From Vitrella brassicaformis CCMP3155 (taxonomy: Eukaryota > Protista > Chromerida): 64,000 nucleotides of DNA. The notes under the pieces were generated by a model that made no database searches, was not told the origin of the DNA, and was given only the letters and a program-made list of their open reading frames with translations. Positions within the stretch are counted from its first letter, which is position 1. Each line of letters starts with the position of its first letter. A program made the position numbers and the translations under genes. Of this stretch, positions 904 to 58,200 are shown in pieces. The stretch spans positions 6,210-70,209 of the forward strand of contig CDMY01000470.1 of NCBI GenBank assembly GCA_001179505.1, written 5' to 3'.

Positions 904-3630
904 TCAAGAAGATCGGTAGTACAAAACACCACCGCCTGCGTACCCCCCGCCCTCACCATCAACACCACCAGCCCCATCACTCCCCTGCCTCTGCCTCTGC
1001 TGCTGTTGCTGTTGCTGATGCACTTGCTGCTGTAGCTGTTCTTGTGGGTAGTGCTGGGGCCCCCAATACCCCGGACCAGCAGCACCAGCTGAGGAGGACG
1101 GATCAGCACCTGCCCCTGGCCCCTCCCTGCCGTCATCTGCTGCTGCAGGTGCTGGAGCCTGCCCCTCCCCTCCCACCCAATGGTGGTGGTGATGATGATG
1201 ATGCCCATGTGCCGTCTGGTCGTGAGCAGCTGACGGACTGGCTACCGACTGCTGAGGAGGGTAGCCAGGCATGAAGGGGTCGTTGGCAACAGCTGCTGCT
1301 GCTGCTGCTGCTGGTGGCGGCATGCCGTTGTGGGCCACTGGCAGCACCCCAAAGGGAGGCATCGGCACCGAACCTGCTGACGGGGGCACAGGTATCTGCT
1401 GCTGCTGCTGCTGGTGGTGCTGCTGGTTCATCTCGCCATGACGAACCTTCGGCGACGCTGACATGTTAGGAATCTGCCGACTTCGGTTTCGGGAGCCCGT
1501 TGCCGAACCACCCCCAGTAGCAGCAGCAGCAGCGCCGTAGTTGTGTGGACTGGAGCTGCCCTGGGACGCCGCCGAGGCCGAAGCGCCGCCAGGTTGCTCC
1601 TGCGCGTCGCTGTCCGACGGAAGGAACGGCGGGCTGCCCTGACCAAACGGCACTCCGACCCCAATCGCGCCGCCGCCGTGTGCCGCAGCGGGATGATACT
1701 GATACTGATACTGCTGCTGGTGTTGGTGTTGGTGTTGGTGATGATGGGGGACGGCAGCTGCGTAGGCACCACCCCATGGATTCATGTGCGCAGCGGGGGG
1801 CTGGAACATGGTGGGAACCATCCGTGGGCTGCCTGCCGCTGCTTGTGGTGCCGGCTGGTCACCCACCCCTCCCGGAACGCCCCAGAATGGCACCGGCGGC
1901 CCGCCGTTTGTCTTGGCGTCTGGGAATCCATCCTGGGCGGGGCTGGCATGCTGCACAGGCCGGTAGGGGTGTGTTGGCGGGGATGCATCGAGTGACGGCG
2001 AGGGAGAGGGCGACGGCGACGCAGGTGCCGCTCCCACCGGCCGATACTGCCCTTGCGGCATCAGGGGCGGCATCCCGTAGTGCCCAGCCGCAGGCGCGAA
2101 CGCTCCCGCCAGAGGATGGAACTGCCCCCCCATCGCCCCCATACCAGCAGCCCCACCGTGGTGCATCGGCATCACGCCGTTCAGCTCCCCAGCCTCGTGC
2201 GCCACCCCCTGCTGTGGCGCCTCGTCGCTGCCATTGCCATTGAGAGCCGCCGCGGCCTTGGGCAGTGGAGGCTGGAGGGGGGGAAGATCTGGAATCGGCG
2301 GCCCATTGGCGTAGGGATGGTGGAAATGGGCGTAGTGCGGGTTGACGGCCTGTCTCATCGCTGGCATCGGTGGCGTGGGCAGCGGCAGGTGCGGGGCGGG
2401 CACGGCAGAGGGGTGTGGAGGGTGGGGATTGGGGTGGGGCGGGGGCGCCACGGCCGAGCGTGACCGAAAGTGCTGCGCGAGGCCGTGCAGCATCTCATAC
2501 TCGAGCGTGTCCTGCGGGCCGTCCCCCGAGCCGTCGACGCCCACAGCCTGTCCACAGGCCGATGACGACTGTCCTCTCCCACCACAGATGAGCGACAGGA
2601 GGTAGTGAGGGTCCCTTTGGCGCTCTCGCTCCTCCTCGGCGTCCTTCTGCCGCTGGGCTGTCAGCTCGTGCTCACGCGCACTCTCGAAGTGCAGGTCGCG
2701 ATTAAGCTCAGCCGTGCGGGCCTTCTCGGCCTCAATCAGCCGGTCGAGCTCTTCCTGCTCGGCCTGGATGCGCGCCTCCTCCTCCCTGACCGCCTCAATC
2801 TCCTTGTCGATACCGTCGACCGCCACGGCGATGTCGCCCCCGGCCCGCTCCTCCCTCTCCTTGTCGTCACGCAGCCGCGCCATCTCGGCCGCGTCGTCCA
2901 GCTCGCGCACCTCCCTCGCCAGCTCGATACTGAGGGCCTCTTGCCGCCATCTTGTCAGATCGTCATGGTCGTGCAGCTTCTGGTTCTCATGCGCGTGGAT
3001 GAGCAGCGCCAGCTCAACCTCCATTGCCGCGACCTCGGCCGTCACAACAGCCAGCCGCGCCCTGTTGCTCTCGTACTCGGCGGCGGGAGGGATGGCTGGC
3101 TCGGGCGACGGGAAGCCTTCATAGCCCTCCCTCTCTGCTGCGGCGGCTGCCGCCGCCGCCTCGTCCTCGACGTCGTCGAGCAGCTGCATCTCCTCGGGGT
3201 CCACTTCTGTCATGATCTCGTCATCCTGATTATTGACGTTGTTGGCAGCTCCACCGTCGCCGCCCTGCTGCTGGTGCTGCTGCTGATGCTGCTGGTGCAG
3301 ACCCTCGTTGTTGACAAGGCAGTTGTCTCCGGGATTGTGGTCGCCGTCACCATCGCCTTGACTGCCATCGCCAGGCTGAGGGAAGGGGTGTGAGGGCATG
3401 TTGTTGTCATTGTCACGATCATTGTCATGATCATGGTCAACGTCGATGTCGAGCATGTCGTCCTCTGTGTTGGGCTGTAGGTGTGGTATGATGCTGTTGT
3501 GTGGGAGGTGGCTCATCATGTGGGGCTGCGGGAGGTGGGGGGTCGTCTGGGTGTTGTGCGTCGGAGTCAGCGTCTGCGCTTCGTTCCCAGTCAACTCTTC
3601 AGCCTCACAACCAAGCGCACCGGTCATCTC
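904..3630 (-). CDS. Hypothetical low-complexity (Q/H/P/A/G-rich) protein with a central acidic coiled coil; one 2.7-kb exon, possibly with further 5' exons
   Basis: Long open frame 904-3780. Acceptor ccacag|GAG ATG at 3630. E/R/A/L heptad-rich block (AEYESNRARLAVV...EEERERQRD). Stop at 904-906. Confidence 0.75.
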   Translation of the reverse strand, partial: EMTGALGCEAEELTGNEAQTLTPTHNTQTTPHLPQPHMMSHLPHNSIIPHLQPNTEDDMLDIDVDHDHDNDRDNDNNMPSHPFPQPGDGSQGDGDGDHNPGDNCLVNNEGLHQQHQQQHQQQGGDGGAANNVNNQDDEIMTEVDPEEMQLLDDVEDEAAAAAAAAEREGYEGFPSPEPAIPPAAEYESNRARLAVVTAEVAAMEVELALLIHAHENQKLHDHDDLTRWRQEALSIELAREVRELDDAAEMARLRDDKEREERAGGDIAVAVDGIDKEIEAVREEEARIQAEQEELDRLIEAEKARTAELNRDLHFESAREHELTAQRQKDAEEERERQRDPHYLLSLICGGRGQSSSACGQAVGVDGSGDGPQDTLEYEMLHGLAQHFRSRSAVAPPPHPNPHPPHPSAVPAPHLPLPTPPMPAMRQAVNPHYAHFHHPYANGPPIPDLPPLQPPLPKAAAALNGNGSDEAPQQGVAHEAGELNGVMPMHHGGAAGMGAMGGQFHPLAGAFAPAAGHYGMPPLMPQGQYRPVGAAPASPSPSPSPSLDASPPTHPYRPVQHASPAQDGFPDAKTNGGPPVPFWGVPGGVGDQPAPQAAAGSPRMVPTMFQPPAAHMNPWGGAYAAAVPHHHQHQHQHQQQYQYQYHPAAAHGGGAIGVGVPFGQGSPPFLPSDSDAQEQPGGASASAASQGSSSPHNYGAAAAATGGGSATGSRNRSRQIPNMSASPKVRHGEMNQQHHQQQQQQIPVPPSAGSVPMPPFGVLPVAHNGMPPPAAAAAAAVANDPFMPGYPPQQSVASPSAAHDQTAHGHHHHHHHHWVGGEGQAPAPAAADDGREGPGAGADPSSSAGAAGPGYWGPQHYPQEQLQQQVHQQQQQQQRQRQGSDGAGGVDGEGGGYAGGGVLYYRSS

Positions 3631-4238
3631 CTGTGGACACACGCACAGAGAGAGAGAGAGAGAGTCAGACAATACAGAAGACACACACACACACACAGGC
3701 AGGGAGGCAGACTGTCTCATGAGCTGTCTATCCCTCAACTGACCTAGCCCATTCCAGCCTGGCGCCAGAACGGACATCACAACTTCTTCTCACACACCCT
3801 GCCTGTCTGCCTGCCTGGGTGTCTGTCTTTCATCGTTCGAGGCTTGTGCGCTACGTGTCTGTGTGCGTGTGTGCGTGGCCTCTTTGCTCACCGCGCGGGG
3901 AGGACGACCCCCACGGAGAAATCCTCTATCCTTCGCGACCCGAAACGCCGAATCTTCAAAGAGCAAGCCCTCACCGCTTGACGATGGTCACGCCATCATG
4001 CACGTGTGATGCACTCACACGTCCGTCTTTCATCGGAACGTCTGCAGCTCGCGCCCAGTTGAGCGAGCTCGCCTTTGTCTTCTTCGGCGTCTTCGGCGTG
4101 GTCTCTTCTTCGACGTGGAAGGGTGTATTGGAGATCTGGGCTTCAGCAGCAAGGGTACAACACAGCAGCCGCTGCATCCCTTGATCCATTCCACTTCAGT
4201 CGCCATCGTGTTCGTCTCCCTCCCGCAGCTGTGTTTTA

Positions 4239-9604: not shown

Positions 9605-9904
9605 NNNNNNNNNNNNNNNNNNNNNNNNNNNNNNNNNNNNNNNNNNNNNNNNNNNNNNNNNNNNNNNNNNNNNNNNNNNNNNNNNNNNNNNNNNNNNNNN
9701 NNNNNNNNNNNNNNNNNNNNNNNNNNNNNNNNNNNNNNNNNNNNNNNNNNNNNNNNNNNNNNNNNNNNNNNNNNNNNNNNNNNNNNNNNNNNNNNNNNNN
9801 NNNNNNNNNNNNNNNNNNNNNNNNNNNNNNNNNNNNNNNNNNNNNNNNNNNNNNNNNNNNNNNNNNNNNNNNNNNNNNNNNNNNNNNNNNNNNNNNNNNN
9901 NNNN
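9605..9904. other. Assembly gap (300 N)
   Basis: Run of N. Confidence 1.
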
Positions 9905-9986
9905 TCATCCGTCGGCGCACAGAGGAACGGCGTCGACGCGAACGGACTCGACTGGCTGCTGCCCTTCGGGGCGCCCTGACAGACCA

Positions 9987-10022
<36 letters not shown>

Positions 10023-13000
10023 ACACACAAAAGTGGTGGTCGTGGTGATGGTGTGAGAGGGTGTGTGTGTATGGGTACCTGTGTTGACGCAGGGTGCGGA
10101 GGACCGCCCATCATCATGTTGGTGTGGGGGCGATATGCACCAGGGTGATGCCCATGGTGGTGCCCCGGGTGACTCGGCGGCGGGTGGCTGGGCGGTGGCG
10201 GGTGCGCCGGTGGGTGGGGGTGGGGCGGGGGCGCCACGGCCGAACGTGACCGAAAGTGCTGCGCGAGGCCGTGCAGCATCTCATACTCGAGCGTGTCCTG
10301 CGGGCCGTCCCCCGAGCCGTCGACGCCCACAGCCGCGGCCGATGACGACTGTCCTCCCCCACAGATGAGCGACAGGAGATAGTGAGGGTCCCTTTGGCGC
10401 TCTCGCTCCTCCTCGGCGTCCTTCTGCCGCTGGGCTGTCAGCTCGTGCTCACGCGCACTTTCGAAGTGCAGGTCGCGATTCACCTCAGCCGTGCGCGCCT
10501 TCTCGGCCTCGATCAGCCGGTCCAGCTCTTCTTGCTCGGCCTGCATGCGCGCCTCCTCCTGCCTGACCGCCTCAATCTCCTTATCGATACCGTCGACCGC
10601 CACGGCGATGTCGCCCCCGGCCCGCTCCTCCCTCTCGATGTCGGCACGCAGCCGCGCCAGCTCGGCCGCGTCGTCCAGCTCGCGCACCTCCCTCGCCAGC
10701 TCAGTACTGAGGGCCTCTTGCCGCCATCTTGTCAGATCGTCATGGTCGTGCAGATTCCGGTTCTCGTGCGCGTGGGTGAGCAGCGCCAGCTCAACCTCCA
10801 TTGCCGCGACCTCGGCCGTCACAACAGCCAGCCGCGCGCTGTTGCTCTCGTACTCGGCGGCGGGAGGGATGGCTGGCTCGGGCGACGGAAAGCCTTCACA
10901 GCCCTCCCTCTCTGCTGTGGCTGCTGCCGCCGCCTCGTCCTCGACGTCGTCGAGCTGCTGCATCTCCTCGGGGTCCACCTGCGCCTCGATCTCCTCCTGC
11001 AGGCCAGCATAATCCTCCTCCTCCTCCTCCTCCTCGTCGCCTTGGTATGCCTCCTCTTCCTCGTCAAAGCGGCCCGCACCCTCGCCGATGTCAAGCGGCT
11101 GACGAATGACACACAACACAACACAACACATTACACACACACACACACCCGTGACATCTGTATGTCCTGTTGATCTCTCCAGTGTCCTCACCTGAGCGAT
11201 AGCATCGTCACGGTACTCTACTTGTTCCTCATCCTCGCCTTGGTATCCCACCTCCTCCTCTGCCGCCTCGCCCGCTGGTCCCTCGAGCTCCTCCTCATGC
11301 TGAAGCAGCTGCTGTGCCTGCGCCTCGATCTCCTCCTGCAGGTCAGCATAATCCTCCTCCTGGTCGAGTCGAGCGCCATACTGCATGCCGCCCGCGGCAG
11401 CTGCTGCAGCTCCGGCCTCCTCCTGCTCCCCTTTGACCTGAGTGTATTGTTCTTCCTCCTGTGGTGGCTGAATCAGGCGGGGCGGGCCCTCCTGGACGTC
11501 AGACACGCCACCCACATCCTACATCCACACACACAGAGACCACAGATGAGCTGCGGCTGGAGCGAGAGCGTGTTTCTCGTTTTGGCTCTCTGGCAAGTCA
11601 GGTACATACCTGGATGAGACGCAGTTGGTCGGGCTGTTGGGCTCCGTTGAGTGCCCGCTCCATATCGTGGATCTCGCCGTTGCCGCGAGCCTCCTCTGAC
11701 AGCTGCTGGGGCGCCTCCTGCGACGGGGGGTGGTCGGGCACGAGGAGCACGGGCGGCAGCAGGTCCTTGTCCTCCTCATGAGCAACGTCAGGCTGCACGC
11801 ATCATGGCATGTATGTCATGAGAAATGTACGTGTGTATGGTAACACTGCACGTGTGTCTTCTGTCTGACCTGGACGAGAGTTGGTGCTTGTTCGAACGTC
11901 TGCGGCTGTTCCGGCGCGACCGATGCACCATTCCGCTGCTGCGAGAGGTCGCGGCTGACGGGCAGGCCGGGCGGCACGACGGGCGGCAACAAGTCTTCCG
12001 AATCAGGCATTAGGTCACGACTCACAAGATGCGGCGGGGGGTACTGCACACCACCCGCACCCCCTTCCACACTCGCCCTCTGGCTACTGGCAGGCCCCTC
12101 CCCCTCCCCCGCCTCCATGTCTGACAGCTGCTGCAGGCTGGGCGGCGGTGTGTGGCCAGCCACCTGCTGTCCCTCCTCCCCGCCGATGCGCACATCCACC
12201 CCTCCCTCGGTGTCCAAATCAACGTGCACGGGCGCCGCCAGGTGTCGGGGCGCGTCGATGTCGATGTGTCGGTCCTCGCCCGCCTCGCGGCACGTCAGAT
12301 GCAGGTTGGCCGATGCGTCGTCACGGTACTCTACTTGTTCCTCATCCTCGCCTTGGTATCCCTCCTCCTCCTCCTCTGCCGCCTCGCCCGCTGGTCCCTC
12401 GAGCTCCTCCTCATGCTGAAGCAGCTGCTGTGCCTGCGCCTCGATCTCCTCCTGCAGGCCAGCATAATCCTCCTCCTGGTCGAGTCGAGCGCCATGGCAA
12501 CACATACAAACGTCCAATGCAATGACACACGTGTGAAGCCCTGTGGGCGCGACTGACGGGTGCTGCTGGATGTTCGGCAGGCGGAAGGCCGTACTGCACG
12601 CCGCCAGCGGCAGCTGCTGCATCGACCACCTGAGCGTATTGCTCTTCCTCCTGTGGTGGCTGAATCAGACGGGGCGGGCCCTCCTGGATGTCAGACACGC
12701 CACCCACATCCTACATCCACACACACACAGAGACCACAGATGAGCTGCTGCTGGAGCGAGAGCGTGTTTCTCGTTTTGGCTCTCTGGCAAGTCAGGTACC
12801 TACCTGGATGAGACGCAGTTGGTCGGGCTGTTGGGCTCCGTTGAGTGCCCGCTCCATATCGTGGATCTCGCCGTTGCCGCGAGCCTCCTCTGACAGCTGC
12901 TGGGGCGCCTCCTGCTGCGGGGGGTGGTCGGGCAAAACCACGGGCGGCGGCAGGTCCTCCTCCTCCTCCTCATGAGCAACGTCAGGCTGCAGGCATCATG

Positions 13001-13700
13001 ACATGTATGTCATGAGAAATGTAAGTGTGTATGGTTACACTGCACGTGTATCGTCTGTCTGACCTGGACGAGAGTTGGTGCTTGTTCGAACGTCTGCGGC
13101 TGTTCCGGCGCGATCGATGCACCATTCCGCTGCTGCGAGAGGTCGCGGCTGACGGGCAGGCCGGGCGGCACGACGGGCGGCAACAAGTCTTCCGAATCAG
13201 GCATTAGGTCACGACTCACAGGATGCGGCGGGCGGTACTGCACACCACCCCCACTCCCTTCCACACTCCCCCTCTGGCTACTGGCAGGCCCCTCCCCCTC
13301 CCCCGCCTCCATGTCTGACAGCTGCTGCAGGCTGGGCGGCGGTGTGTGGCCAGCCACCTGCTGTCCCTCCGGCTGCTGAGCGGTCGGATGGTACACGTGC
13401 TCCTCCCCGCCAATGGGTCCGTGCGGTGACATAGCCTCCCCGCCCTCTGCCTCCATTTCCTCCCACCAGCTCAGGCGTCGCGGCTCGGTGTCCAAATCAA
13501 CGTGCACGGGCGCGTCGATGTCGATGTGTCGGTCCTCGCCCGCCTCGCGGCACGTCAGATGCTGGTTGGGCGACTCGGGGTGCAGGGCGCCCGACGGCAG
13601 GGATGGCGACGCGACAGAGGGAAGCGAGAGGTCCTCCTCCAGCTCGGCGTCCTCGGCGGCCTCCCCATACGGATCGCACACCGTCTCGCTCTCTTGGCCG
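9905..13700 (-). CDS. 3' portion of chimeric 'gene A': acidic repeat exons fused to a copy of the coiled-coil exon of the 904-3630 gene
   Basis: ORFs 9905-11515, 11816-12622 and 13010-14548. Repeated EEDYAGLQEEIEAQ blocks. Coiled-coil copy at 10217-10978. Confidence 0.55.
10217..10978 (-). repeat. About 760-bp direct duplicate of 2431-3204
   Basis: Near-identical nucleotide text. I counted about 10 differences in a 210-bp stretch. Confidence 0.97.
11190..13560. repeat. Tandem duplication of a 1.1-1.25 kb multi-exon unit (11190-12300 and 12315-13560)
   Basis: Matching blocks 11200-11390 vs 12315-12500, 11435-12176 vs 12628-13368, and 12195-12300 vs 13480-13560. Confidence 0.95.
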
Positions 13701-14600
13701 GGGCTGCGGACAACGCCCACCACGACGGTGATGTCGTCCCTTTTGCCGCCCCGGCCGTCGCGAAAATCTGGGTCCTTGGGGTTGTGGATCCGTGCCTCGC
13801 GGGCGAAGGGGGTTGGTGCCGTGCGGTCGACGCTGGTGTTGTAGGCCAGCTCCCCAATCTCCCTGGCCAGCTTGGCCGCCGTCATGCGCCACATGTCGTC
13901 CGCCCGCCTAACGACAACATCGATGAGAATATTGTCGAAGACGCCGTCCGTGGCCGCGATGATGACGTCGCCCTCCTGGACAGCCACCTCCAGGGTCTGG
14001 ACGCCGGCGCTCCAGTAGCCGCTGCGGGGTCCGGTGGGCGTCCAGAAGGGCGGCTTGTTGGCGGGGAGCGACCTGAGTCTGTCGGGCAGGGGATCCACGA
14101 TGCACCGGCGCCCGTCACTGGTCGTCACCCGCCACTCTCTCGCTTTTGGGCCGCACAGCTTGGCCAGCTGGAATGGGCACTTCCAGTGGCCGGGCAGCTG
14201 CATGGGGAGGAGCTGGCCCTCGATCGTCCCCTCGTCGAGGTCGTCCAGGCAGGTCACCGCAGCCACGGAGTCGCCAAAGGTGGCCAGGTGGGCGAAGACT
14301 CCGCCGTCCTGTTCCACCAGTTTGACGATGGTGGCCGTGGTGGAGCCCTTCGGGCCGTCCGCCACGGTGTCTTCCCACCCCGCCAGCATCACCTCGCTCG
14401 CCCTGTTGTGGCAGCCGCGGCTCTCGCCCGCTGAGTGCTCCTCGCATCGGGACATCATGTAGCGGGCGATCGCCTGGCTGCTGTAGCCGAAGTCCTTCTT
14501 GATGCCGCCCACGCCATGACCGCGCCGGTCGCGGCGCTCATGAACCACGCGTCCTCACACTCGTCCTCCCTCCCTTTGCCCCTGGAGAAGGCTGCCATCT
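13700..14600 (-). pseudogene. PP2C/PPM (PTC7-like) phosphatase domain of gene A, frameshifted at the DG motif
   Basis: Motifs ECEDAW, GVGG, TFGDS, IIAATDGVFDN and GGKRDDITVVV. The frame changes at about 14515, where VVADG is expected. Confidence 0.85.
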
Positions 14601-16738
14601 CCAGCACCTTGGAGCAAGAGGGAGGGGGAGAGGGTCGCGTCGGGGCTGTGGCAGTGGGGCTGGCGGTTGGGGGCGTGTTGAGAGAGGTGGACGGCGACTC
14701 CCCCGCCGATGAGGGCCGCTTGTGCTGGTCGGGGTGCTGCAGGGGGGGCAGCTGGCCGGCAGGCGTGACGACTGGCGAGAGTGGCGCTGCCGATGCGGCC
14801 GAGACGGGCGTGGCGTCCTCCTCTGCAGGGGGCTGTTCCCCACCCCTCTCATGCGCCTCTTCCCTCTGGTGAGCCACCATCTGCATGAAGGTGTCGATCT
14901 GCCGGTCGACCACCGCCCGGTCAGCCGCCGCTATGGGGGATGAGTCGACAGACGGCGCGCCATCAGGAGCACTCTCCGCCACGTCCGCACGGATGGCGGC
15001 ACTGGCGTGTGTGAGGGGCAGCACGATCGACTCAGGGGGGGTGGATGGAGGCAGGGGCGGGAGTGTGTCGTGCGAGCGGGAGACGGGGGAGATGCCCTTG
15101 ACCGTCTGGGGCGAGGCCGCTGGCACAGCTTGCGTTGTGTCGACCACCCTCAGCTTGCTCACATCTGGCCTTCCCGCCGGCACGTCTTCTCTGTCTGTCG
15201 GTGCGGCGGCCTCCTCCGGTTGCTGCTGCCGCTGTTTGTCTCGCCCCTCCTTGAGTCCCTCGGTGCTCGTCGATCGCGCAGCCCATTTCTCGTCCTTCTC
15301 CTCATCTGCCCTCTCCGGTGGCGGCACGGCAGCCATCGGGGCCTCTCGACGGACAGGCGGCGAGAGTGGAGAGGACGTGAAGGCCCCCAGCCCCTCCCTA
15401 GCCACGATGGTGTCCTCAGCGGCCTCATCGCCCAAGTGCTCCTCCCCATCTTGCGTCGCCGGTGCTTCAGGGCTCCCGAGAGTGCCTCTGTCTCTGTCAC
15501 GGTCTCTGTACTGCTGGGCGGGCGACGGCGTGGGTGAGAGTGGAGGCGGGGGCGACGGCTCCTCCTCGCCCTCGCTCTTGTCTTCTTGCTGTGTGCTGCT
15601 GGGCGGGGTGGGCTGCGAACGGGATGGGGCCTGGTCGGGCACCATGTCCGGCTGAAGGTCCGCGTGGTACACTGCACGACACAAACACACGAAGGAACGA
15701 ACGTGCGAACGACATTCACACACACATCCCGATTGTGTGTGTGGGGTGCTGGTGTGTTTGTGTGTGCGTACCAGCTCCCCCAGCGCCGCCCTCTTCGTCG
15801 GTGTACTCGTCCCTGTCGTCGCTCTTGGGCAGCGGCACGCTGCCGGCGCTCACAGACTTCTCCGTCGCAAGAGCAGGATACGACGGCGGGGGCGGTGTAG
15901 ACACCTGCACCCACAACACACACACACCGATGTTGCCTCGGTCACACACGCCACACGCACACAGAGAGAGACATACGCACCTTCCTGTCGGCCTGTGTCT
16001 CGGGGTCGCTCTCGTCGATGCGGCCACCAGGAACGGCACCAGCACTGGCCAAGAGCGGCCCGCCTCCCATCCCGAAGCCGCTGCCCGCGAGCGCGTCTCT
16101 GATGGGGGGGCTGCTGATGCTGAGGCGGTGTGCGTGTGGGTTGGTGGGCGGGGCGGGGACGGGGAATGGGGCCTTTGAGGGCGACATGATGCCGCCAGAC
16201 TTCATGGTGATGGAGTCGCGCTTGCCCATGTTGATCTGCGGGGAGGTGGGCATCGACTCGCTCTCGGGCAGCGACACACGGGGGTTGGCGGCTTTGTCTG
16301 AGAGACAAGGGAAGAGGGGGAACCCCGTTTCTTTGTGTGTCAAGCAAGGGTGTGTGTGCGTGAGATGCCGCCCATTTGCTCACTCACCGGGCGGCTGAAT
16401 GACGGTGGAGTGTGACTGCACCCCGTCTGCGCGCGGCCTGAGGTGGGTGGGGGGGATCATGTTGGCCGCCGTGCTGGGCGTCCCGTTGCCCTGCGATACC
16501 GTCGGGCTCTCAGGCGTCCCGCCACCTGCACCCACACACACAGAGAGATGTGAAACAAACCAGCTCGTCCATGCGGTGAATGAATCGTGCTGGCGCACCT
16601 GAGGAGGCGCCTGGCTGCGTGGACGTCATAGTGGTCTGCAAGGGGGCCTTCGGTGAGAGAGTCGACTCGCCCCTCTCGCGAAGGGCGCTGCCTGTGGGGG
16701 GCGGCTCGCTGCGCCACCGACTCAAATCCTGCGAGCAG

Positions 16739-16770
<32 letters not shown>

Positions 16771-17739
16771 GACAGAGGGGTGAGGAGCCATTATCACATT
16801 GAATTCATCGTCATTCATTCACAGTGAATGATCCATTATCACACTACACGGTGTGAGTGACGCGCGTGGGAAGTAGGGGGAGAGGGTGTCGGTGTGCTTA
16901 CGAGTCTCATTTGGAGTATTTCGAGCCCGGCGGCCTGTTTGATCTTGTCCATGTCGCTGCCTGGCCGGGTGTCGCGGTCCAACTCGGCCTCGTCAGTCGA
17001 CGATGAGGCGCCACGCAATGACTAATGAATTATTCACACCCATGACACACAGAGAGAGATTTGTGTGCGTGTTGGTGTTGGTGTTGGTGTTGGTGTGCTG
17101 TGTGTGCGAAGCGAAGCGGTCGGCGTACGGGTAGTTGTGTGAGCATGGACTTGACTGCGTCCTTCTTGTGTGCGATGGCGTGGCGCGTTCTTGTGTGCGA
17201 TGGCGTGGCGCGTCTCCTCGATCTGCTCCTCCAGCGTCTTTGGGCCCTCCACACCGTCGCTGTCGTTGGCGCCTCCCGTGGACAGCTCGTCACCGTCTAT
17301 CATATCAACTAGGTGGCCTGCATGCATCAACAGAATCACCCACACCACCCAAAGCAGCAATGAGAACGAATCCAAAGGCCAATAACTTCATGATCACATG
17401 AATGACAGTGCATAATGAGTGAGCCATTATCACATTGATCAATTGAATGATCCATAGTCACGCAACACCATGTCAGTGACATGATCACATGCAATGGATG
17501 AATCAATGGATGGCATCATCGTGCTGGCGCACCTGATGAGGAGATTCATAGTGGTCTGCGGTGGGAGAGCGGCTCGCTGCACCAACACACACCAACACAC
17601 ACACACACACACAAACGACAGGTGGGTGAATGTGTTAGTGGAGTGCATTCGACCAACAACCGCACACAAACATCAACCACACACACGCACACACGTGTTC
17701 CGGACTGACCTTGATCTCCTCCTCGCCCTCTATCATCAT
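14600..17739 (-). CDS. 5' exons of gene A (low-complexity S/P/E-rich), with two alternative ATG mini-exons (17303 and 17739) and a frameshifting 25-nt duplication
   Basis: GT-AG-bounded exons at about 14600-15670, 15770-15905, 15980-16290, 16390-16525, 16600-16730, 16900-17010 and 17130-17303. The frame is continuous into the PP2C N-terminal motif (ORF 14455-15723). Confidence 0.55.
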
Positions 17740-18165
17740 GACTACTTGACCTGCATGCATCAACAGATTCACCCACACCAGCCAAAGCGCCAATGAGAAC
17801 TGATCCAGAGGCGAAGGACTTCATGATCACATCAATGACACTGCATAATGAGCGAGCCATTATCACATTGAATTCATCGTCATTCATTCACAGTGAATGA
17901 TCCATGGTCACACCACACGACGTGAGTGACATGCATAGTCCACAATCAATCACTTGAATGACTTCATTCAGTCATCATCGTGAAAAACTACGTGAGTGAC
18001 ATGTGTCATTGCAAAATGGTCAAGTGAGTCGTTTGTTGACTGACTGACGACCGTTGAGTGTCATTGCGATGTGTCTCTGTGTGTGTGTGTGTGTGTGTGT
18101 GCTCACGGTGTGGGTACGGCTGAATGATGTGCATTCACATCTGTATACCGGTACGAATACACATG

Positions 18166-18594
18166 TGGGTGGATGCATCGACCGGGTGGTGCATTCCGAT
18201 GCATTCCTCTCACTTTTCTGTCTATCTGACTGAGAATGCATCATGTACACACTCCCTCTCTACGTGGGTGCGTACCTCACGTCGATTCGTCACCTCAGCG
18301 GCGACAGACCGACGTCCGGAGACCTCAGCGGCGAGGAGAGGACCTCACTCTGGCGATAAGGTCGGCTGCTCTTACGGCCTGGCCTCTCGTGGCAGAACAG
18401 CTTGAAAAACGCCGCGCAAATGACGAAACTGAGCGATCCCTGCCTGCAAGCTCGCAAAAACGACATCGCAACAAACAACGCAGCAGGAGCGCTAATCATC
18501 TCATCTTTGCTTCCCTCCGCCGACATCCATCGCTTTTTGGCAGCCAGAAGGCCATTCTATGCGTCAACTGGCATTGCAGAAGTGCACTGGAGGC
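18166..18594 (-). promoter_or_regulatory. Putative promoter, 5'-UTR exon and intron start of gene A; inverted copy at 22585-23001
   Basis: Lies upstream of the gene A ATG exons and contains the donor ag|gtacgc. Near-identical reverse-complement blocks: 18166-18278 vs 22890-23001 and 18415-18594 vs 22585-22765. Confidence 0.6.
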
Positions 18595-21556: not shown

Positions 21557-22568
21557 ATGACAAAGTTGGATAAGGACGAGGTCAGTGCGGCACACGTGTG
21601 TGCGGGTGTCTGTGTTCGTGTGCTGGTGTGCGTGTGTGTTTGTTGGTCGAATGTGGCATGTCGAACACACAATTCGGCAGAAGGAGCACATGTGCATGAA
21701 TCTCTCTCTCTCTCTCTCTCTCTCCGGGCGTGTGGATGGCTTGCAGAGCCAGGAGAGCCTGAACATTCGCCGCCACCTGATGGCCGGGACGCTGGACGCC
21801 AACACGCCCACCACGTCCAAGGACTCGGTGAGTGAGCGAGCAATTCAGGGTGGGTGGGNNNNNNNNNNNNNNNNNNNNNNNNNNNNNNNNNNNNNNNNNN
21901 NNNNNNNNNNNNNNNNNNNNNNNNNNNNNNNNNNNNNNNNNNNNNNNNNNNNNNNNNNNNNNNNNNNNNNNNNNNNNNNNNNNNNNNNNNNNNNNNNNNN
22001 NNNNNNNNNNNNNNNNNNNNNNNNNNNNNNNNNNNNNNNNNNNNNNNNNNNNNNNNNNNNNNNNNNNNNNNNNNNNNNNNNNNNNNNNNNNNNNNNNNNN
22101 NNNNNNNNNNNNNNNNNNNNNNNNNNNNNNNNNNNNNNNNNNNNNNNNNNNNNNNNNNCAGGGTGGGTGGGTGGGTGGGTGAGATGAGATGGGATGAGAG
22201 AGATTGGTTCACCGCAGTTCCCTCCCTTCACGGCATACACGCCTCTCTCTCTTCACCTGTGTCTGTGTTGTGCCTCTAGAGTGAGCACCCCCTCCCCCCT
22301 CCCGCTCCCCAGCTCCCCTCCATGCAGTCGCGCATTCGGCACACGGCGGCCCTGCAGTCGCAGCTCGAGCTACTCAACGACACCCTCAACCTCGAGACGT
22401 CCACAGACCATGACATAGACCCCGCGGCTGACGTCACGGCCTCCCCCATCCCCTCGCGCGTCGCCCGATTCGATCTGGCGGCCGACACAGCTCGCCTTCA
22501 GGGCAGCGTCGAGCGGTTCCTGGCCACGAGAGACGAGCTGCAGCAGAGGGAGGACTTGAGGACCGCAG
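21557..22568 (+). pseudogene. 'Gene B': three in-phase 5' exons of a hypothetical protein, truncated by the inserted promoter copy at 22585
   Basis: MTKLDKDE | SQESLNIRRHLMAGTLDANTPTTSKDS | SEHPLPPPAPQLPSMQSRIRHTAALQSQLELLNDTL...REDLRTA all join in phase 0 through GT-AG introns. No downstream exon is evident. Confidence 0.6.
21859..22158. other. Assembly gap (300 N) inside a (GGGT)n intron tract
   Basis: Run of N flanked on both sides by cagggtgggtggg. Confidence 1.
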
Positions 22569-22584
22569 GTGCAGTTTCTGTACC

Positions 22585-42766: not shown

Positions 42767-43009
42767 TGGATTGACTGATTGATGAGACACACACTGCTCT
42801 CCCTGGCGGTGGCTGCATACCGAGACACTGATACAAATGGGCGGATGGATGGATGGATCGGTCAATCACCAGAAGGTCCAACTTCTGTCCATCCATTCAC
42901 CAACCATCGGTGACAAATTAAGGCCGAGAAACTCCCGGCGAGAATTTGAGACGGGACAAACCCCGCAAACCCTGCCACAATGCAAAACACACTTTTGCGT
43001 TTTTCTCCG

Positions 43010-44630
43010 TCACAAACACACCAATACCCCCACCAAGCAGCAGTCGGCGGCGGCGCCCACTCCATCTACCGATAAGGGCGACACGACGGCCACTTCCCCG
43101 TCATCACCAGCCCCACCACAGCTGCACCTAAGGATGGGCGCCTATATCAGGGCCCGCGACGACAAGAGGGGGCAGTGTGAGGACGCCGCCAGCATTGCGG
43201 CTAAGGCGGGCGTCATGGTGGTGGCGGACGGCGTGGGAGGCTTCGCCGACATGAAGGACGGCGGCGTCAGTGCACGCGGTTTAATGCAACTCTCGCCGCC
43301 CTCGCCTTCATCTTTCTCTGGGTCTTCCTTCACGGGGGCATTCTCAAGGGCTCCGACAAGATTATCTTGTCAGGCATGGCGGTCTCAGTGTTGCTGTCCG
43401 GCGCGGCGGGGGCTATCTATTGGTTGCCGAAGCCTCTGTCGTTGGATTGCAAAAAGACATACGCCAACCTGTGTTTTGCGCGTGCAGTGGCCGTCAACAC
43501 CATGGACGAGGCCATGGCCACGCCACCACCCCAAGACGCCCACACCAACAGGGCCAAGCAGCTGCTGGAAGCAGGATGGGCCAAGACAGCCGCCGACCGA
43601 CACGGCCCGCCCGGCGCCAGGACCATCGCCGTAGCCGCCACCACGCACAACGAGGAGGGCCGGCTGTGCATGGACCTCGCCGATAAGGGCTACACTACGG
43701 TGGACCAAAAGATCCGAAGTAACCATACGACTTGGAACGCAAAAGGCGACGTCTGTATGTCTCAAAGTCTTCACTTGTGTCTCGGGTTGTGTCTCCGATG
43801 GCTGCCTACATTTTATATCCGACAGACATGTGATCTCTCACCGGCTCAGCCTCACACGAGCACTGCCGCGGCGGGGGGCTACGCCAGGCTGTGGATTCAG
43901 TCCGCCAACAGGTAGTCAAGAGGGAGAGACACGTACATATAGCATAACCCAGAACAATGCTTGCTCGTGTGTCAGCTGTTGTTCTAGCTATAGCCGCCGC
44001 CATACACGATGAGGAGGCCGGCTGTGCGTGGACCTTGCCGGCTATGGCGACTCGACGGTGTTGGTCGTCAGGCGCCCCGCTCACGGTCCCCCCACCATCG
44101 TGGCCGCGCTGGAGCCCATGCAGCACCCCAACCAGCCCAACTACCCCTTACAGCTGCAGCGCATCCCCCGCTGCCGGGCCGCCGCCATCCGGGCCGCCGA
44201 CATCCTAATACCACCACCGGCCACCCTCAAGCGGCTCACCCGCACTGACCACCAAGCTGAGGATGCGTCAGAGGCGACCATCGGCATTCAGGCGTGTCGG
44301 TGTCCCCTCGAGTGCGGCGATATTGATATCGCCTGCTCGGACGGGGTCACCGACAACCTGTTCCAGTGGGAGATCGTCTCCTTCGCCAACATCCTCCGCA
44401 GCCAGCCCTCCCACAAGATGGCCGCACTTCTTGCGCGGCTGGCGTACCGCAAGAGCAAGAACAAGAGCGAGAAGCTCGACACGCCTTTCCGGCAGATGTG
44501 GGAGGCGCACGGCGAGGAGTGCCGGCAGGGCGCTAAGGAGGACGACATCACGGTCCTGGTGGCCAAGGTGGAGGCGGGAGAGGGGAACTGTGAGGAGGGG
44601 GAGGCGGGGCGACGGGCAGGCTGGCTGGTT
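43010..44630 (+). pseudogene. PP2C/PTC7-like cassette, copy 2, with a 194-bp insertion
   Basis: Same motifs as copy 1. Insertion at 43279-43472 shifts the frame. Confidence 0.85.
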
Positions 44631-45092
44631 CTGCTGTGTGCTCCAAAAGTAAAACTGACACACACACCAAAAACAGAAACACAGCCGTCATCCACCAATC
44701 CCACGTGCCTGTGTGTGTCATGACCAACCGGGCTGCCGAAGAGAGTGCGGCATTTGGTGTTGAGGTCCTGCTGCACATCGAGTGGGAGTGTCTTGACGTA
44801 GTCGGCCGTCTTGGTTTCCTCGCCTGTCGGTGCCGGTCGGCACGTCTGCGTCTGCGTCTGCGTGTCGAAGTAGTACTGCATGCAGCCACACAAAGGAGGA
44901 ATGTCAATCGAGCCTCTTGACGTTGGTGTGTCTGTTCGTCGGCCGCTCACATCCACAGTGAGGCGTCGCTTTGTGGCCTGGACGTTGCAGGCGTCCGTCA
45001 ACTCGTCAATCGTGTCACGAGACACTGAAAGGGACAGTATTGAGGTGTCTTTGTGTCTGCCTATCTGTCTGTCTGTCTATCTGTGTGTATCT
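44630..45092 (-). pseudogene. 5'-truncated copy of the secreted Cys-repeat gene at 55061-56010
   Basis: Encodes VSRDTIDELTDACNVQATKRRLTVD...YYFDTQ...NTKCRTLFGSPV, but the signal-peptide exons are absent. Confidence 0.85.
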
Positions 45093-45182
45093 GTTGACAA
45101 CACCACGGCCACAAGCCCCACCACTTATCTCATGCACGACTGGTCCACTCTGACGCATAGCATCCATCCATCCGTATACACA

Positions 45183-55292: not shown

Positions 55293-55353
<61 letters not shown>

Positions 55354-56010
55354 ATGTGTGTGTCAGGCTACGAAAGCACGTACGATGAGTACTACCGGTA
55401 TTGTTTGACTGGTGGATTCATCCCCTTAGTCAAGTTCCCTGTCGGTCCGTGAGATACAGACAGACAGACAGACGGACACGAAGACACATACCTCAATCGA
55501 TGTGTTGCTGTCCCTTTCAGTGTCTCGTGACACGATTGACGAGTTGACGGACGCCTGCAACGTCCAGGCCACAAAGCGACGCCTCACTGTGGATGTGAGC
55601 GGACGACGAACAGACACACCAACGTCAAGAGGCTCGATTGACATTCCTCCGTGTGTGACTGCATGCAGTACTACTTCGACACGCAGACGCAGACGTGCCG
55701 ACCGGCACCGACGGGCGAAGAAACCAAGACGGCCGACTACGTCAAGACACTCCCACTCGATGTGCAGCAGGACCTCAACACCAAATGCCGCACTCTCTTC
55801 GGCAGCCCGGTTGGTCATGACACACACAGGCACGTGGGATTGGTGGACGACGGCTGCGTTTCTGTTTTTGATGTGTGTGTCCAGTTTTTACTTTTGGAGC
55901 ACACAGCAGAACCAGTGCATGCACGCGTGAGCACACCAGTCCACACACATATTTCTGCGAGTGCGTCCAGAACTCGCCAGCAAGAGACATCAGCCCACAT
56001 GGATGGATGA
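55061..56010 (+). CDS. Small secreted protein with about three Cys-containing internal repeats
   Basis: Signal peptide MMKAAAACLCLLLVLCEG, spliced exons, and the repeats RTLNRACKTQFG / DELTDACNVQAT / QDLNTKCRTLFG. The 3' end is uncertain. Confidence 0.65.
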
Positions 56011-56199
56011 CATAACCACTGCATCAGTTGAATTGCCATTGACGTCTCGCTACATGTCCATATCCTCCCTCCATCACCCCACATGACACGCCAAGTCGTG
56101 TCTCTTCACACAGTCCCCACGAACGCATGATTCGGTCAATCACGTACGACAGATATAAAACGTAAGCAGCGATACTGACAAAGACGGCCGCCTCCTCTA

Positions 56200-58065
56200 G
56201 TTCTCAAGACCCCCTCCGCCGACCCCACCTTGGCCACCAGCACCGTCATTGGCATTGTCATTGTCATGGTCATTGTCCTCTGTGTTAGGATGCAGGTGTG
56301 GTATGCTGTTGTGCGGGAGGTAACTCATCATGTGCGGCTGCAGGAGGTGTTGTGCGTCGGAGTCACACACGGCAGGTCGGTGTCGACGTGCTGTGGCTGC
56401 TGCTGCTGTGACTGCGGTGGCTCCTCCTCCTCGCCCTCATCATCGTCGTCCGCCCAGAAGTCGTCGTCATCGTCGCTGTCCTCCTCCACGACCTCCTCGC
56501 GGGCGTCCACATCCTCCTCCACCAGCCAGCCTGCCCGTCGCCCCGCCTCCCCCTCCTCACAGTTCCCCTCTCCCGCCTCCACCTTGGCCACCAGGACCGT
56601 GATGTCGTCCTCCTTAGCGCCCTGCCGGCACTCCTCGCCATTCGCCTCCCACATCTGCCGGAAGGGCGTGTCGAGCTTCTCCCTCTTGTTCTTGCTTTTG
56701 CGGTACGCCAGCCGCGCAAGGTGTGCGGCCAGCTTGTCGGCGGGCAGGCTCCGGAACGTCTGGAAGAAAAAGACGATCTCGTGGTGGAACAGGTTGTCGG
56801 TGACCCCGTCCGAGCAGGCGATAATGATATCGCCGCTCTCGACGGGGCACCGACACGCCTGAACCCCGATGGTCGCCTCTGACGCATCCTCAGCTTGGTG
56901 GTCCGTGCGGGTGAGCCGCTTGAGTAGGGCCGGTGGTGGTATTAGGATGTCGGCGGCCCGGCGGCGGGGGATGCGCTGCAGCTGGAAGGGACAGTTGGGC
57001 TGGTTGCGGTGCTGCATCGGCTCCAGCGCGGCCACGATGATGGGAGGGCCGTGGTGGGGGAACCTGGACCTGACGGCCATTATGGTCGAGTCGCCGTATG
57101 CGGCGAGGTCCACACACGGCTGGCCCTCCTCGTCGTACGTGGCAGCGGCTATAGCTAGAACAACAGCTGACACACGAGCAAGCATTGTTCTGGGTTGTGC
57201 TATACGTACGTGTCTCTCCCTCTTGACTACCTGTTGGCGGACGGAATCCACAGCCTGGCGTAGCCCCCCGCCGCGGCAGTGCTCGTGTGAGGCTGAGCCG
57301 GTAAGAGATCACATGTCTGTCGGATATAAGATGTAGGCAGCCATCTGAGACACAAACCGAGAAACAAGTGCAAACTCTGAGACATACAGACATCGCCTTT
57401 TGCGTTCTAAGTCGTATGGTTACTTTGGCATGTTTCGGTCCACCGCAGTGTCGCCGTTATCGGCGAAGTCCACGCACAGCCGGCCGTCCTCGTCGTGCGT
57501 GGTGGCGGCTACGGCGATGGTGCTGGCGCCGGGCGGGCCGTGTCGGTCGGCGGCTGTCTTGGCCCATCCCTCTTCCACCAGCTTCTTGGCCCTGTTGGTG
57601 TGGGCGTCTTGGGGCGGTGGGGTGGCCATGGCAGCGCCCATGGTCTTGACGGTCAGTGCACGCGCAAAATCGCGTGCACTGACGTCGTATTTGTCGACGA
57701 AGCCTCTCACGCCGTCCGCCACCACCATGACGCCCGCCTCAGCCGAAATGCTGGCGGCGTCCTCACACGGCCCCTCTTGTCGTCGCTGGCCCTGATATAG
57801 GCGCCCATCCTTAGGTGCAGCTGCTGTTGGGCTGGTGACGAGAGGCTGCCGCGGGTGCTCGTCTTGCCGGAGGTGGTGCCGGTGGTGTTTGTGGTGGGCA
57901 GGAGTGGGGGGAGGTGGGCTGTGGTGAGTGTGGGGCTGTCGTTGCGCCTCTGTGGGCAGAGGCGGGATGCCTGGGGCGACGGTACACGATGGCCTGGTGG
58001 ACGGGGGACTCGTCGTCCGTGTCCTTCACAGCAGCGGTACCAACCGAAGGCAAGGAGAACCGCAA
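56200..58065 (-). pseudogene. PP2C/PTC7-like cassette, copy 3, with a PPR-derived leader and a mosaic acidic tail
   Basis: Same motifs as copies 1 and 2. Frameshifts in the leader and at about 57770. The C-half ORF 56328-57251 is open. Confidence 0.85.
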
Positions 58066-58200
58066 AAGAGAGCGAGGCGGAGAAACCGCAAAAGCGCGTT
58101 TTGCATTTTATCGCAGGGTTTGCGGGGTTTGCATTGTCCCGTCTCGAATTCTCGCCGCAAGTTTTCTCGGCCTTATTTATCCAATTGTTGTGGATGGATG

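What the first reader, a model, noticed from the sequence alone, without database searches (positions are those of the whole stretch)
2431..58180. Local gene-building patchwork: genes assembled from pieces of their neighbours
Seen in sequence: at least nine duplicated segments have both source and copy inside these 64 kb. They are a coiled-coil exon (2431-3204 to 10217-10978), an N-terminal fragment of the same gene (about 3460-3569 to 56275-56365), a PPR fragment (29886-30078 to 57837-58028, partly also 23391-23510), a promoter/UTR module (18166-18594 to 22585-23001), an ATG mini-exon module (three copies), a 1.2-kb tandem unit, a 2.2-2.7 kb inverted block, and three PP2C cassettes, each with a different leader or tail. 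Some joins show short microhomology or 21-22 bp direct repeats. No transposase, Rep/helicase or RT ORF and no poly(A) tail is visible. Inference: a proximity-biased copy-paste process (template switching or templated double-strand-break repair, or non-autonomous Helitron/Pack-type capture) is shuffling promoters, start exons and domains around an expanding PP2C family.
Basis: partly seen in the sequence, partly recalled or inferred. Interest (0 to 1): 0.8.

Follow-up and report, generated by a model that had tools for sequence, protein, structure and literature searches.

The report
Patchwork of partial gene copies
A stretch of the alga Vitrella brassicaformis really is stitched together from partial copies of its own genes, some from next door and some from other scaffolds, but this is ordinary DNA duplication and rearrangement, and one pair rests on a doubtful scaffold join.

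Summary
The window is Vitrella brassicaformis CCMP3155 scaffold C470:6210-70209. All nine repeats exist near the stated coordinates (78-2750 bp, 79-96% identity). Several labels are wrong. The "ATG mini-exon" is a 45-nt coding piece on the minus strand. The "PPR fragment" carries no PPR motif. The "promoter/UTR module" label stays untested.

Gap 1 fails the continuity test. Window 9905-11085, starting at the gap edge, is 100% identical to C470:4183-5363, which ends at a third gap. The 10-kb contig between them is probably misplaced. The "coiled-coil exon copy" is part of a whole-gene paralogue pair. Gap 2 flanks overlap by 13 nt inside a hybrid intron.

Window 9.9-24.9 kb is a mosaic. Blocks of 0.2-1.4 kb each have their closest relative at a different locus, seven on other scaffolds. 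Several joins I checked keep the reading frame. The annotated 1244-aa protein CEM15772.1 joins a PP2C domain, two acidic blocks and a coiled coil.

I found no flanking repeats, poly(A) or transposon ORFs, and introns are kept. The three PP2C cassettes show relaxed constraint and private lesions. Best reading: repeated DNA-level partial duplication with microhomology joins. The scan noted many similar chimeras elsewhere in this genome. Interest is moderate.

The parts
907..4177 (-). Gene 1 = CEM15765.1 (P0006, 987 aa). Low-complexity protein with a central coiled coil. Exons 4177-3974, 3927-3892, 3630-907.
2202..3222 (-). Coiled-coil segment X' (2421-3222) plus a downstream piece (2202-2403). 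Both are paralogous to gene 2, at window 10209-10996 and at C470:3686-5274.
   Evidence: dN/dS is 0.36 in frame against 1.3-1.6 out of frame.
3460..3569 (-). N-terminal coding piece of gene 1 ('TPTHNT...PNTED'). A copy of it lies in the tail of cassette C.
   Evidence: No other genomic copy was found.
9605..9904 (.). Gap 1, a 300-N placeholder. Its flanks are not continuous.
9905..11085 (-). Block X. It is 100% identical to C470:4183-5363, which ends at a third gap. It is probably an unmerged contig overlap. Internally it is a mosaic: 9912-10216 C308-like, 10209-10996 gene-1-like, 10978-11022 the 45-nt module, 11023-11085 the acidic-family exon.
9905..14389 (-). Annotated chimeric gene CEM15772.1 (P0005, 1244 aa): PP2C-4 domain, two acidic multi-exon blocks, then the coiled coil. 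The model stops at the gap edge.
11197..13573 (-). Two tandem 1.2-kb units of the acidic block with GT..AG introns. The tandem junction is in frame ('EYRDDA|SANLHL') with microhomology TCG. Paralogues lie on C897 and C748.
13617..14467 (-). PP2C-4 body. The closest relative is the stand-alone PP2C P0004 on C512 (82% nt, 69% aa). C289 is more distant (72%). Junction J1 with the acidic block is at 13617-13628.
14458..15849 (-). A 464-codon open frame that joins the end of P' (C499:236k-like), a' (14684-15394, C499:318k-like, 90%) and the PP2C-4 N-terminal 'EDECEDAWF' motif. A one-nucleotide frame change follows, before GHGVGG.
15383..17291 (-). Blocks P (15383-16783, 85%) and Q (16881-17291, 88%). 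They are partial copies of a C499:235.5-237.7 kb gene, in permuted order. A degenerate second copy of the P start lies at 17488-17629.
17286..18594 (+). Left arm of an inverted duplication, about 80% identical to 23001-21452. The stretch 18041-18813 also has a relative on C295.
21452..23001 (.). Right arm of the inverted duplication. It carries inserted exon R (about 21744-21827, C499:235k-like), gap 2 (21859-22158), and the b fragment 22159-22567 (C499:318k-like, 95%; exon from 22280). R to b is a hybrid intron and the splice would be in frame.
23390..24854 (+). PP2C cassette A. It has a 2-nt deletion near 24481 in exon 3, and it lacks the upstream and downstream parts kept in C.
29887..30078 (+). 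A 192-nt copy of the cassette C/A leader inside long ORF 28799-30784, upstream of the PPR exons. It is read in the same frame as in cassette A. It has no PPR motif.
42888..45081 (+). PP2C cassette B. It has a private 191-194 nt insert at 43283-43473 and a 605-nt deletion relative to C (junction CTGGT). Its 3' part is transcribed (MMETSP transcript P0002, 100% match).
55451..58202 (-). PP2C cassette C, the most complete copy. The annotated gene is CEM15787.1 (P0001; exons 57728-57423, 57346-57230, about 57068-56331). It has a 1-nt deletion near 57775 before the CEDA motif, and GVRGF in place of GVGGF.
56189..56603 (-). Rearranged 3' end of cassette C: a 61-nt B-like copy, then an acidic stretch, then about 165 nt of gene-1-like sequence read out of frame ('TPTHNTSCSRT' then stop), then a 61-nt A-like copy.

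Best explanation
This part of a Vitrella brassicaformis scaffold has collected many DNA-level partial gene duplications over a long period. Copy identities run from 79% to 96%.

Pieces of 0.1-2.7 kb, still carrying their introns, were copied from neighbouring genes and from genes on other scaffolds. They were joined end to end by break repair or by replication template switching that needs only a few bases of homology.

Later events added a tandem duplication inside a gene, two inverted duplications, microhomology deletions and small templated insertions.

Where a join kept an open frame or fell inside an intron, it yielded chimeric gene models. The clearest is the 1244-aa PP2C / acidic repeat / coiled-coil protein CEM15772.1.

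The three PP2C cassettes are ordinary local paralogues with different end points, and they are now under relaxed constraint.

Shown: the blocks, their relatives, the join sequences, the retained introns, and the absence of transposon hallmarks. Inferred: the repair or replication mechanism, the direction of copying, and that the chimeras are expressed.
For: - Block map against the whole genome: each block has one to three relatives and none is a high-copy repeat.
- Direction of copying: in C499, b and a' form one continuous exon, and exon R is followed by an intron and then P'. In the window these parts are split, inverted and joined to other partners.
- C897 and C748 share a 3' continuation that the window replaces with the coiled coil, although the window units are closer to C897 than C748 is.
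- Joins change abruptly from about 90% identity to none. Overlaps are 3-13 nt: TCG at the tandem junction, about 12 nt at J1 and J2, CAG plus a run at gap 2, and CTGGT at the deletion in B.
- Introns are retained and are 87-94% identical between cassettes. The acidic block keeps its GT..AG introns in all four copies.
- No terminal inverted repeats, no target-site duplications above the null, and no transposon protein domain in about 60 ORFs.
- The annotated protein CEM15772.1 spans three block types.
- The assembly used Velvet at k=75, so joins with no more than 13 nt of shared sequence inside contigs are unlikely to be assembler errors.
Against: - No read-level, long-read or RNA evidence spans any chimeric join. 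The only transcript found (P0002) covers just the 3' half of cassette B.
- One listed pair sits on an exact 1181-nt duplicate bounded by two gaps, so the order of L, M and R in the scaffold is unsafe.
- Microhomology of imperfect 10-13 nt in 60% G+C DNA can partly be chance extension of alignments.
- The differing identities of a (90%) and b (95%), which come from the same source gene, mean the history is not one simple event.
- The upstream ORF (P'-a'-PP2C N-terminus) is separated from the annotated gene by a frame change, so part of the mosaic may be dead.
Confidence: 0.6

Rival explanations
1. The cluster is an ordinary tandem and segmental duplication cluster shaped by unequal crossing-over and gene conversion among family members. 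The mosaic look comes from erosion of once larger duplications. No special stitching process is involved.
For: - The PP2C cassettes, the tandem unit and the coiled-coil gene pair are classical local duplicates.
- Site patterns in the cassettes come in runs. For example, the last 28 informative sites group B with C. That fits conversion or recombination between copies.
- Cassette C is the most complete copy, and A, B and the leader fragment are overlapping subsets of it.
Against: - Adjacent blocks in 9.9-23 kb belong to unrelated families, so homology-driven exchange cannot have joined them.
- Identity drops abruptly at joins rather than decaying.
- tblastx of 40 kb of C499 against the window finds only blocks a and b. 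There is no eroded larger paralogous region.
Confidence: 0.2
2. Much of the patchwork is an artefact of a short-read draft assembly. It would come from misplaced contigs, gap-filling duplicates and false joins.
For: - Window 9905-11085 is 100% identical to C470:4183-5363, and both copies end exactly at gaps.
- Merging L and R would give one coherent full-length paralogue of gene 1.
- All gaps are 300-N placeholders in a Velvet/SSPACE/GapFiller/REAPR assembly.
- The two sides of gap 2 match C499 at places 83 kb apart.
Against: - All other copies differ by 4-21%, too much for collapsed or duplicated reads or for alleles.
- Joins inside contigs share at most 13 nt, far below k=75.
- The left flank of gap 2 already contains 13 nt of the b-type intron, so that join is present in assembled sequence.
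- An independent transcriptome contig matches cassette B exactly, including its private tail.
Confidence: 0.12
3. Non-autonomous transposons (Helitron, Pack-MULE-like or similar) captured gene fragments and moved them.
For: - Fragment sizes of 0.2-1.5 kb and chimeric ORFs resemble captured fragments.
- The genome does hold young high-copy elements. One starts at 63799, an 830-nt repeat lies at 26900-27734 and a 215-nt repeat at 6672-6887.
Against: - Copies have different end points and no shared termini.
- There are no terminal inverted repeats beyond a 14-nt microsatellite match and no target-site duplications.
- Each block has only one to three copies genome-wide.
- No Rep, transposase or RT domain was found.
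- None of the dispersed repeats borders a block.
Confidence: 0.06

Closest known systems
Segmental-duplication mosaics ('duplication hubs') of primate genomes that spawn fusion genes (from my own knowledge of the literature)
   Same: Short duplicated blocks from several source loci are juxtaposed at one acceptor region. Introns are kept, and chimeric ORFs and transcripts arise. Local and dispersed sources are mixed.
   Different: The blocks here are 0.1-2.7 kb rather than tens of kb. No flanking repeat enrichment was found (microsatellite test not significant). The genome is a compact 73-Mb alga with little transposon content (1.5 Mb).
Replication-based complex rearrangement (FoSTeS / MMBIR) and templated insertions at repaired breaks (from my own knowledge)
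   Same: Joins have 3-13 nt of microhomology. Several templates in both orientations lie within a few kb. A small templated insert (about 165 nt of gene 1) sits inside a duplicated 61-nt stretch in cassette C.
   Different: Block identities range from 79% to 95%, so this is not one event. No junction has been verified in reads. The mechanism is inferred from sequence only.
Chimeric genes born from partial tandem duplication, as described in Drosophila (from my own knowledge)
   Same: There is an in-frame junction inside a gene in the 1.2-kb tandem unit. Parts of neighbouring genes are fused into one ORF.
   Different: Most partners here are not adjacent genes but copies of genes on other scaffolds.
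Pack-MULE / Helitron gene-fragment capture in plants
   Same: Gene fragments with introns are reshuffled into new ORFs.
   Different: No terminal repeats, target-site duplications, shared termini, multi-copy spread or element protein were found.
Other chimeric genes noted by this scan in the same genome (s1-235840, s1-221669, s1-212047, s1-239464; unchecked AI notes)
   Same: They describe DNA-level fusions of partial gene copies, some joined inside introns, and attribute them to heavy duplication rather than to a mobile module.
   Different: Those notes describe single fusions. Here a run of at least nine source blocks lies in about 15 kb (9.9-24.9 kb).

Membership tests
DNA-level segmental/tandem duplication | Copies keep introns and non-coding flanks | tested here: met
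   Cassette introns are 87-94% identical. The acidic block keeps its GT..AG introns in four copies.
DNA-level segmental/tandem duplication | Low copy number, not a dispersed repeat family | tested here: met
   Each block has one to three relatives in 72.7 Mb. The search scores only the best candidates, so these counts are lower bounds.
MMBIR/FoSTeS-type complex rearrangement | Microhomology of a few bases at breakpoints | tested here: inconclusive
   Overlaps of 3-13 nt, some imperfect, occur at five joins. No null model was run for alignment over-extension in G+C-rich DNA.
MMBIR/FoSTeS-type complex rearrangement | Several template switches made in a single event | tested here: not met
   Block identities range from 79% to 95%. 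Blocks a and b come from one source gene but differ (90% against 95%).
Helitron capture | Shared 5'-TC / 3'-CTRR-hairpin termini on all copies, and a Rep/helicase master element | tested here: not met
   Copies end at different points, and the B/C ends lie in microsatellites. No Rep or helicase domain was found in about 60 ORFs. A dedicated terminus scan was not run.
Pack-MULE / TIR-element capture | Terminal inverted repeats plus target-site duplication | tested here: not met
   The only match is a 14-nt (GGAT)n-based inverted pair around cassette B. Direct repeats at block ends are within the null.
Retrocopy | Intron loss and a poly(A) tract | tested here: not met
   Introns are retained.
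PPM/PP2C phosphatase (SpoIIE-type, PF07228) | Domain match above the curated cut-off | tested here: met
   The cassette C ORF scores 27.6 bits against a cut-off of 25. P0001 carries PF07228 precomputed. UniRef names P0005 'PPM-type phosphatase domain-containing protein'.
PPM/PP2C phosphatase (SpoIIE-type, PF07228) | Uninterrupted frame from the N-terminal ED motif through DGxGG to the C-terminal motif | tested here: not met
   C has a 1-nt deletion before CEDA and has GVRGF. A has a 2-nt deletion in exon 3. B has a 194-nt insert that needs splicing. PP2C-4 has a frame change before GHGVGG.
PPR protein (for the 29887-30078 fragment) | PPR repeat motif in the fragment | tested here: not met
   ORF 28799-30784 has no Pfam match. 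PPR motifs occur only at 30459-31394 (weak) and 32500-33288 (strong).

The most novel reading that the evidence does not exclude
Vitrella may have a genome-wide, transposon-independent cut-and-stitch process. It could be polymerase-theta-like templated repair or fork template switching. It would copy exon-scale pieces of genes and join them in frame or inside introns far more often than in other eukaryotes. This locus would be a hotspot, with a run of blocks joined into one reading direction. That would make the alga a natural model for gene birth by exon shuffling.
Probability: 0.2. Interest if true: 0.65.

Novelty: new member of a known kind. Interest (0 to 1): 0.4.

Why it matters
If the joins hold up in long reads and RNA, this locus shows exon-scale shuffling making new multi-domain genes without transposons, in a free-living relative of apicomplexan parasites. 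It adds to many similar chimeras that this scan noted in the same genome.

There is also a practical warning. The public Vitrella scaffold C470 probably contains a nested, misplaced 10-kb contig and an unmerged 1.2-kb overlap. This truncates the model CEM15772.1 at a gap. The protein set also includes PP2C models that start downstream of frame lesions.

Tried and rejected
- **Subtelomere idea.** The repeat at the contig end (63799-64000) contains telomere-like GGGTTTAGGG and lies at many contig ends. Eight fetched copies all start sharply at 'TGTCAGAAGTGC' with unique flanks. It is a young dispersed element that breaks the assembly, not a chromosome end.\n- **Large old duplication shared with C499.** tblastx of C499:303-343 kb finds only blocks a and b.\n- **Breakpoints at microsatellites.** 7 of 49 boundaries lie within 30 nt of one, against 3.9 expected (P about 0.09), which is not significant.\n- **Target-site duplications and terminal inverted repeats.** None was found.\n- **S repeats (16.8-18.2 kb) as a dispersed element.** They have only local and C499 relatives.\n- **dN/dS of the tandem unit.** Only 15 substitutions, so it is uninformative.\n- **Word search with the coiled-coil ORF.** It returned nothing, probably because low-complexity words filled the candidate list. 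Searches used single ORFs by reference or database protein ids.
Full report
**Identity of the sequence**

The window is 60% G+C. It is G000:C470:6210-70209, the right-hand 64 kb of a 70,209-nt scaffold in a 72,700,666-nt, 1064-scaffold genome. Proteins encoded here are named Vitrella brassicaformis CCMP3155 in public sources: CEM15765.1, CEM15772.1 and CEM15787.1. That assembly was made with Velvet at k=75, SSPACE, GapFiller, ICORN and REAPR. It holds 4177 contigs, 931,689 N and only about 1.5 Mb of transposable elements (PMC4501334).

**Check of the observation**

- Coiled-coil segment 2421-3222 ~ 10209-10996, 93.4%.
- 3460-3537 ~ 56275-56349, 86%. With indels the match reaches about 165 nt.
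- 29887-30078 ~ 58027-57837, 85.5%, and 29958-30078 ~ 23390-23510, 89%.
- 18166-18594 ~ 23001-22585, 81%, inverted.
- A 1.2-kb tandem unit, 11197-12313 and 12311-13573.
- A 45-nt module in three copies.
- Three PP2C cassettes: A 23390-24854, B 42888-45081 and C 58202-55451. B and C form the 2.2-2.75 kb inverted block.

So the repeats are real. Several labels are not.

**The gaps, tested first**

- All five gaps I saw are exactly 300 N. The paper's totals give about 299 N per gap. Gap length therefore carries no information.
- *Gap 1 (9605-9904).* The 1181 nt that start at its right edge (9905-11085) are 100% identical to C470:4183-5363, and that stretch ends exactly at a third gap (5364-5663) upstream of the window.
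- The scaffold therefore reads L(...X) gap M gap (X...)R. M is a 10.15-kb contig holding gene 1.
- In L, the paralogy with gene 1 continues to the left of X. The 'PAMRQAVNPHYAH' region shows this. In R, the gene continues to the right of X.
- Merging L and R gives one coherent gene. I judge an unmerged overlap with a nested, misplaced contig M to be more likely (about 3 to 1) than a true perfect repeat. The data here cannot settle it.
- *Gap 2 (21859-22158).* The left flank ends and the right flank starts with the same 13 nt, in a (GGGT)n run. The gap lies about 30 nt after a GTGAGT donor. The gap is probably empty.

**What the coiled-coil pair is**

- Gene 1 (P0006, 987 aa; exons 4177-3974, 3927-3892, 3630-907) and gene 2 share the coiled coil (93% nt). 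They also share a downstream Pro-rich piece (84% nt).
- dN/dS for the coiled coil is 0.36 in frame, against 1.3-1.6 in the two wrong frames.
- This is a gene duplicate under purifying selection, not an exon pasted alone. The two genes do have unrelated N-terminal parts.

**The tandem unit and the 45-nt module**

- The tandem unit aligns with its two external relatives, C897 (L005) and C748 (L006). The alignment shows a minus-strand coding block of several exons with conserved GT..AG introns.
- The tandem junction is in frame ('EYRDDA|SANLHL'), with TCG shared.
- The 45-nt module encodes 'EDYAGLQEEIEAQ'. It occurs once in each unit and once exactly at the join with the coiled coil. It holds no start codon.
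- The window units are 95% alike, 92-93.5% like C897 and 88-89% like C748.
- C897 and C748 share a 3' continuation that the window lacks. The join to the coiled coil is therefore the derived state.

**One annotated chimeric gene**

- The ORF 13013-14554 (minus strand) holds a fourth, distant PP2C domain and runs without a stop into the acidic block.
- The full HMMER search with ORF 9908-11518 returned P0005 = CEM15772.1, 1244 aa. It reads PP2C-4, then two acidic blocks, then the coiled coil. It ends at the stop codon that touches gap 1.
- The closest PP2C relative, P0004 on C512, is a stand-alone 326-aa protein. It matches up to 'EEDLS.PS' and then diverges.
- At that point (J1, 13617-13628) the C512-like and C897-like homologies overlap by about 12 imperfect nt.

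**The mosaic continues upstream**

Whole-genome searches in chunks and fetched loci give the following block map.

| Window coordinates | Closest relative | Identity |
|---|---|---|
| 9912-10216 | C308 | 84% |
| 10209-10996 | gene 1 (local) | 93% |
| 11013-13628 | C897 / C748 | |
| 13617-14467 | C512 (C289 at 72%) | 82% |
| 14684-15394 (a) | C499:317.7k | 90% |
| 15383-16783 (P) | C499:235.7k | 85% |
| 16881-17291 (Q) | C499:237.3k | 88% |
| 18041-18813 | C295 | |
| 21663-21832 (R) | C499:235.5k | 84% |
| 22173-22567 (b) | C499:318.5k | 95% |

- In C499, b and a' are one continuous exon in one frame. Exon R is followed by an intron and then P'.
- In the window, b sits on the plus strand at 22.2 kb and a' on the minus strand at 15 kb.
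- R is joined to b through an intron whose first roughly 20 nt are R-type and the rest b-type. By my reading of the frames that splice would be in frame.
- P' is cut ten codons before its exon end and fused to a' with both source frames kept ('EGLGAF|TSSPL').
- That 464-codon ORF (14458-15849) then reads into the PP2C-4 N-terminal metal-binding motif. A one-nucleotide frame change follows, before GHGVGG.
- The window copies are therefore the rearranged ones.
- A 40-kb tblastx against C499 shows no larger shared region.

**The PP2C cassettes**

- They occur only on this scaffold, apart from a weak relative at C499:328-330 kb.
- C is the most complete copy. A, B and the 192-nt leader fragment at 29887-30078 are overlapping subsets with different end points.
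- The leader fragment is read in the same frame in the long ORF upstream of the PPR exons and in cassette A. It has no other copy in the genome.
- The 3' end of C is rebuilt. It holds a 61-nt stretch identical to B, an acidic stretch, and about 165 nt resembling the N-terminal coding region of gene 1. That last piece is read out of frame, so it gives eleven codons and a stop. A 61-nt stretch almost identical to A follows.
- B lacks 605 nt relative to C, with CTGGT at the deletion junction. The C arrangement is backed by C499:327857-328096.
- Each copy has its own lesion:
  - a 1-nt deletion before CEDA, plus GVRGF, in C, which explains the N-truncated model CEM15787.1;
  - a 2-nt deletion in exon 3 of A;
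  - a 194-nt insert in exon 1 of B, which could be removed by several frame-restoring GT..AG pairs.
- dN/dS is 0.5-0.83, and the introns are as conserved as the exons.
- B is transcribed at least in its 3' half (P0002).
- This looks like relaxed constraint, not an expanding family.

**Mobile-element tests**

- No terminal inverted repeats flank the cassettes, other than a 14-nt microsatellite match.
- Direct repeats at the ends of 14 of the 15 blocks are within the null; the 37-nt value for the tandem unit is expected.
- About 60 ORFs show no transposase, RT or Rep domain.
- Introns are kept, which excludes retrocopies.
- Three dispersed repeats exist in the window (6672-6887, 26900-27734, 63799-64000). 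None borders a block.

**Interpretation**

- The best reading is repeated DNA-level partial duplication with microhomology joins, accumulated over time.
- 'Neighbours only' is wrong: seven of about fifteen blocks have their closest relatives on other scaffolds.
- Proximity bias is true for the rest but is what tandem and segmental duplication always gives.
- The transposon alternative has no support.
- Assembly error explains one pair, and perhaps the position of contig M. It is unlikely to explain joins inside contigs, which share at most 13 nt against k=75.

**Context from the scan**

- The scan's notebook holds 55 notes with the word 'chimeric' in this genome. They include DNA-level fusions joined inside introns.
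- These are unchecked AI notes, not evidence. They do suggest that this locus is one dense example of a genome-wide habit.
- I found no paper describing this for Vitrella.

**Limits**

- No reads or RNA-seq could be examined.

Noticed in passing
window 63799-64000 (contig end): A young high-copy element starts sharply at 'TGTCAGAAGTGC'. At least 40 copies are 98-100% identical, many of them at contig ends, each with unique upstream flanks. It contains a telomere-like GGGTTTAGGG but behaves as a dispersed element that breaks the assembly.
   Followed up: partly
window 6672-6887: A dispersed repeat of about 215 nt with at least 40 copies at 75-97% identity on many scaffolds. It may be a MITE, a SINE or a solo LTR.
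   Followed up: no
window 26900-27734: A dispersed repeat of about 830 nt with at least 25 copies at 73-97% identity. Its two long ORFs have no Pfam match.
   Followed up: no
L001 (C470:1-6209) 5364-5663 and window gaps: Every gap seen is exactly 300 N. Two gaps in C499 and the left end of contig M sit in poly-G/C runs. Gaps in this assembly are placeholders, often at homopolymers.
   Followed up: partly
window 43283-43473: Cassette B has a private insert of 191-194 nt between 'VSAR' and 'DFARA'. It is the subject of finding s1-201953. Its only other genomic match is 70 nt at 80% on C27. Several GT..AG pairs would restore the frame.
   Followed up: partly
window 57149-57090, 24183-24242, 43991-44060: Intron 2 of all three PP2C cassettes holds a degenerate 60-nt copy of part of exon 1 (80-87% identity). 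This is an older internal duplication that predates the three cassettes.
   Followed up: no
window about 14440-14560 (minus strand): PP2C-4 changes frame by one nucleotide between the ED motif and GHGVGG. Cassette C has a similar lesion at the same part of the domain. Both annotated models therefore start at a downstream Met.
   Followed up: partly
P0004 (scaffold C512, L007): The stand-alone PP2C paralogue carries an internal partial duplication of its own C-terminal PP2C segment, right after the point where the window gene switches to the acidic block.
   Followed up: no
window 4010-5852 (+): A JAB/MPN plus MitMem_reg gene (Rpn8 / eIF3f / CSN6-like) lies on contig M.
   Followed up: no
window 30459-33288 (+): A PPR gene with strong PPR repeats at 32500-33288 and a weak one at 30459-31394.
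   Followed up: no
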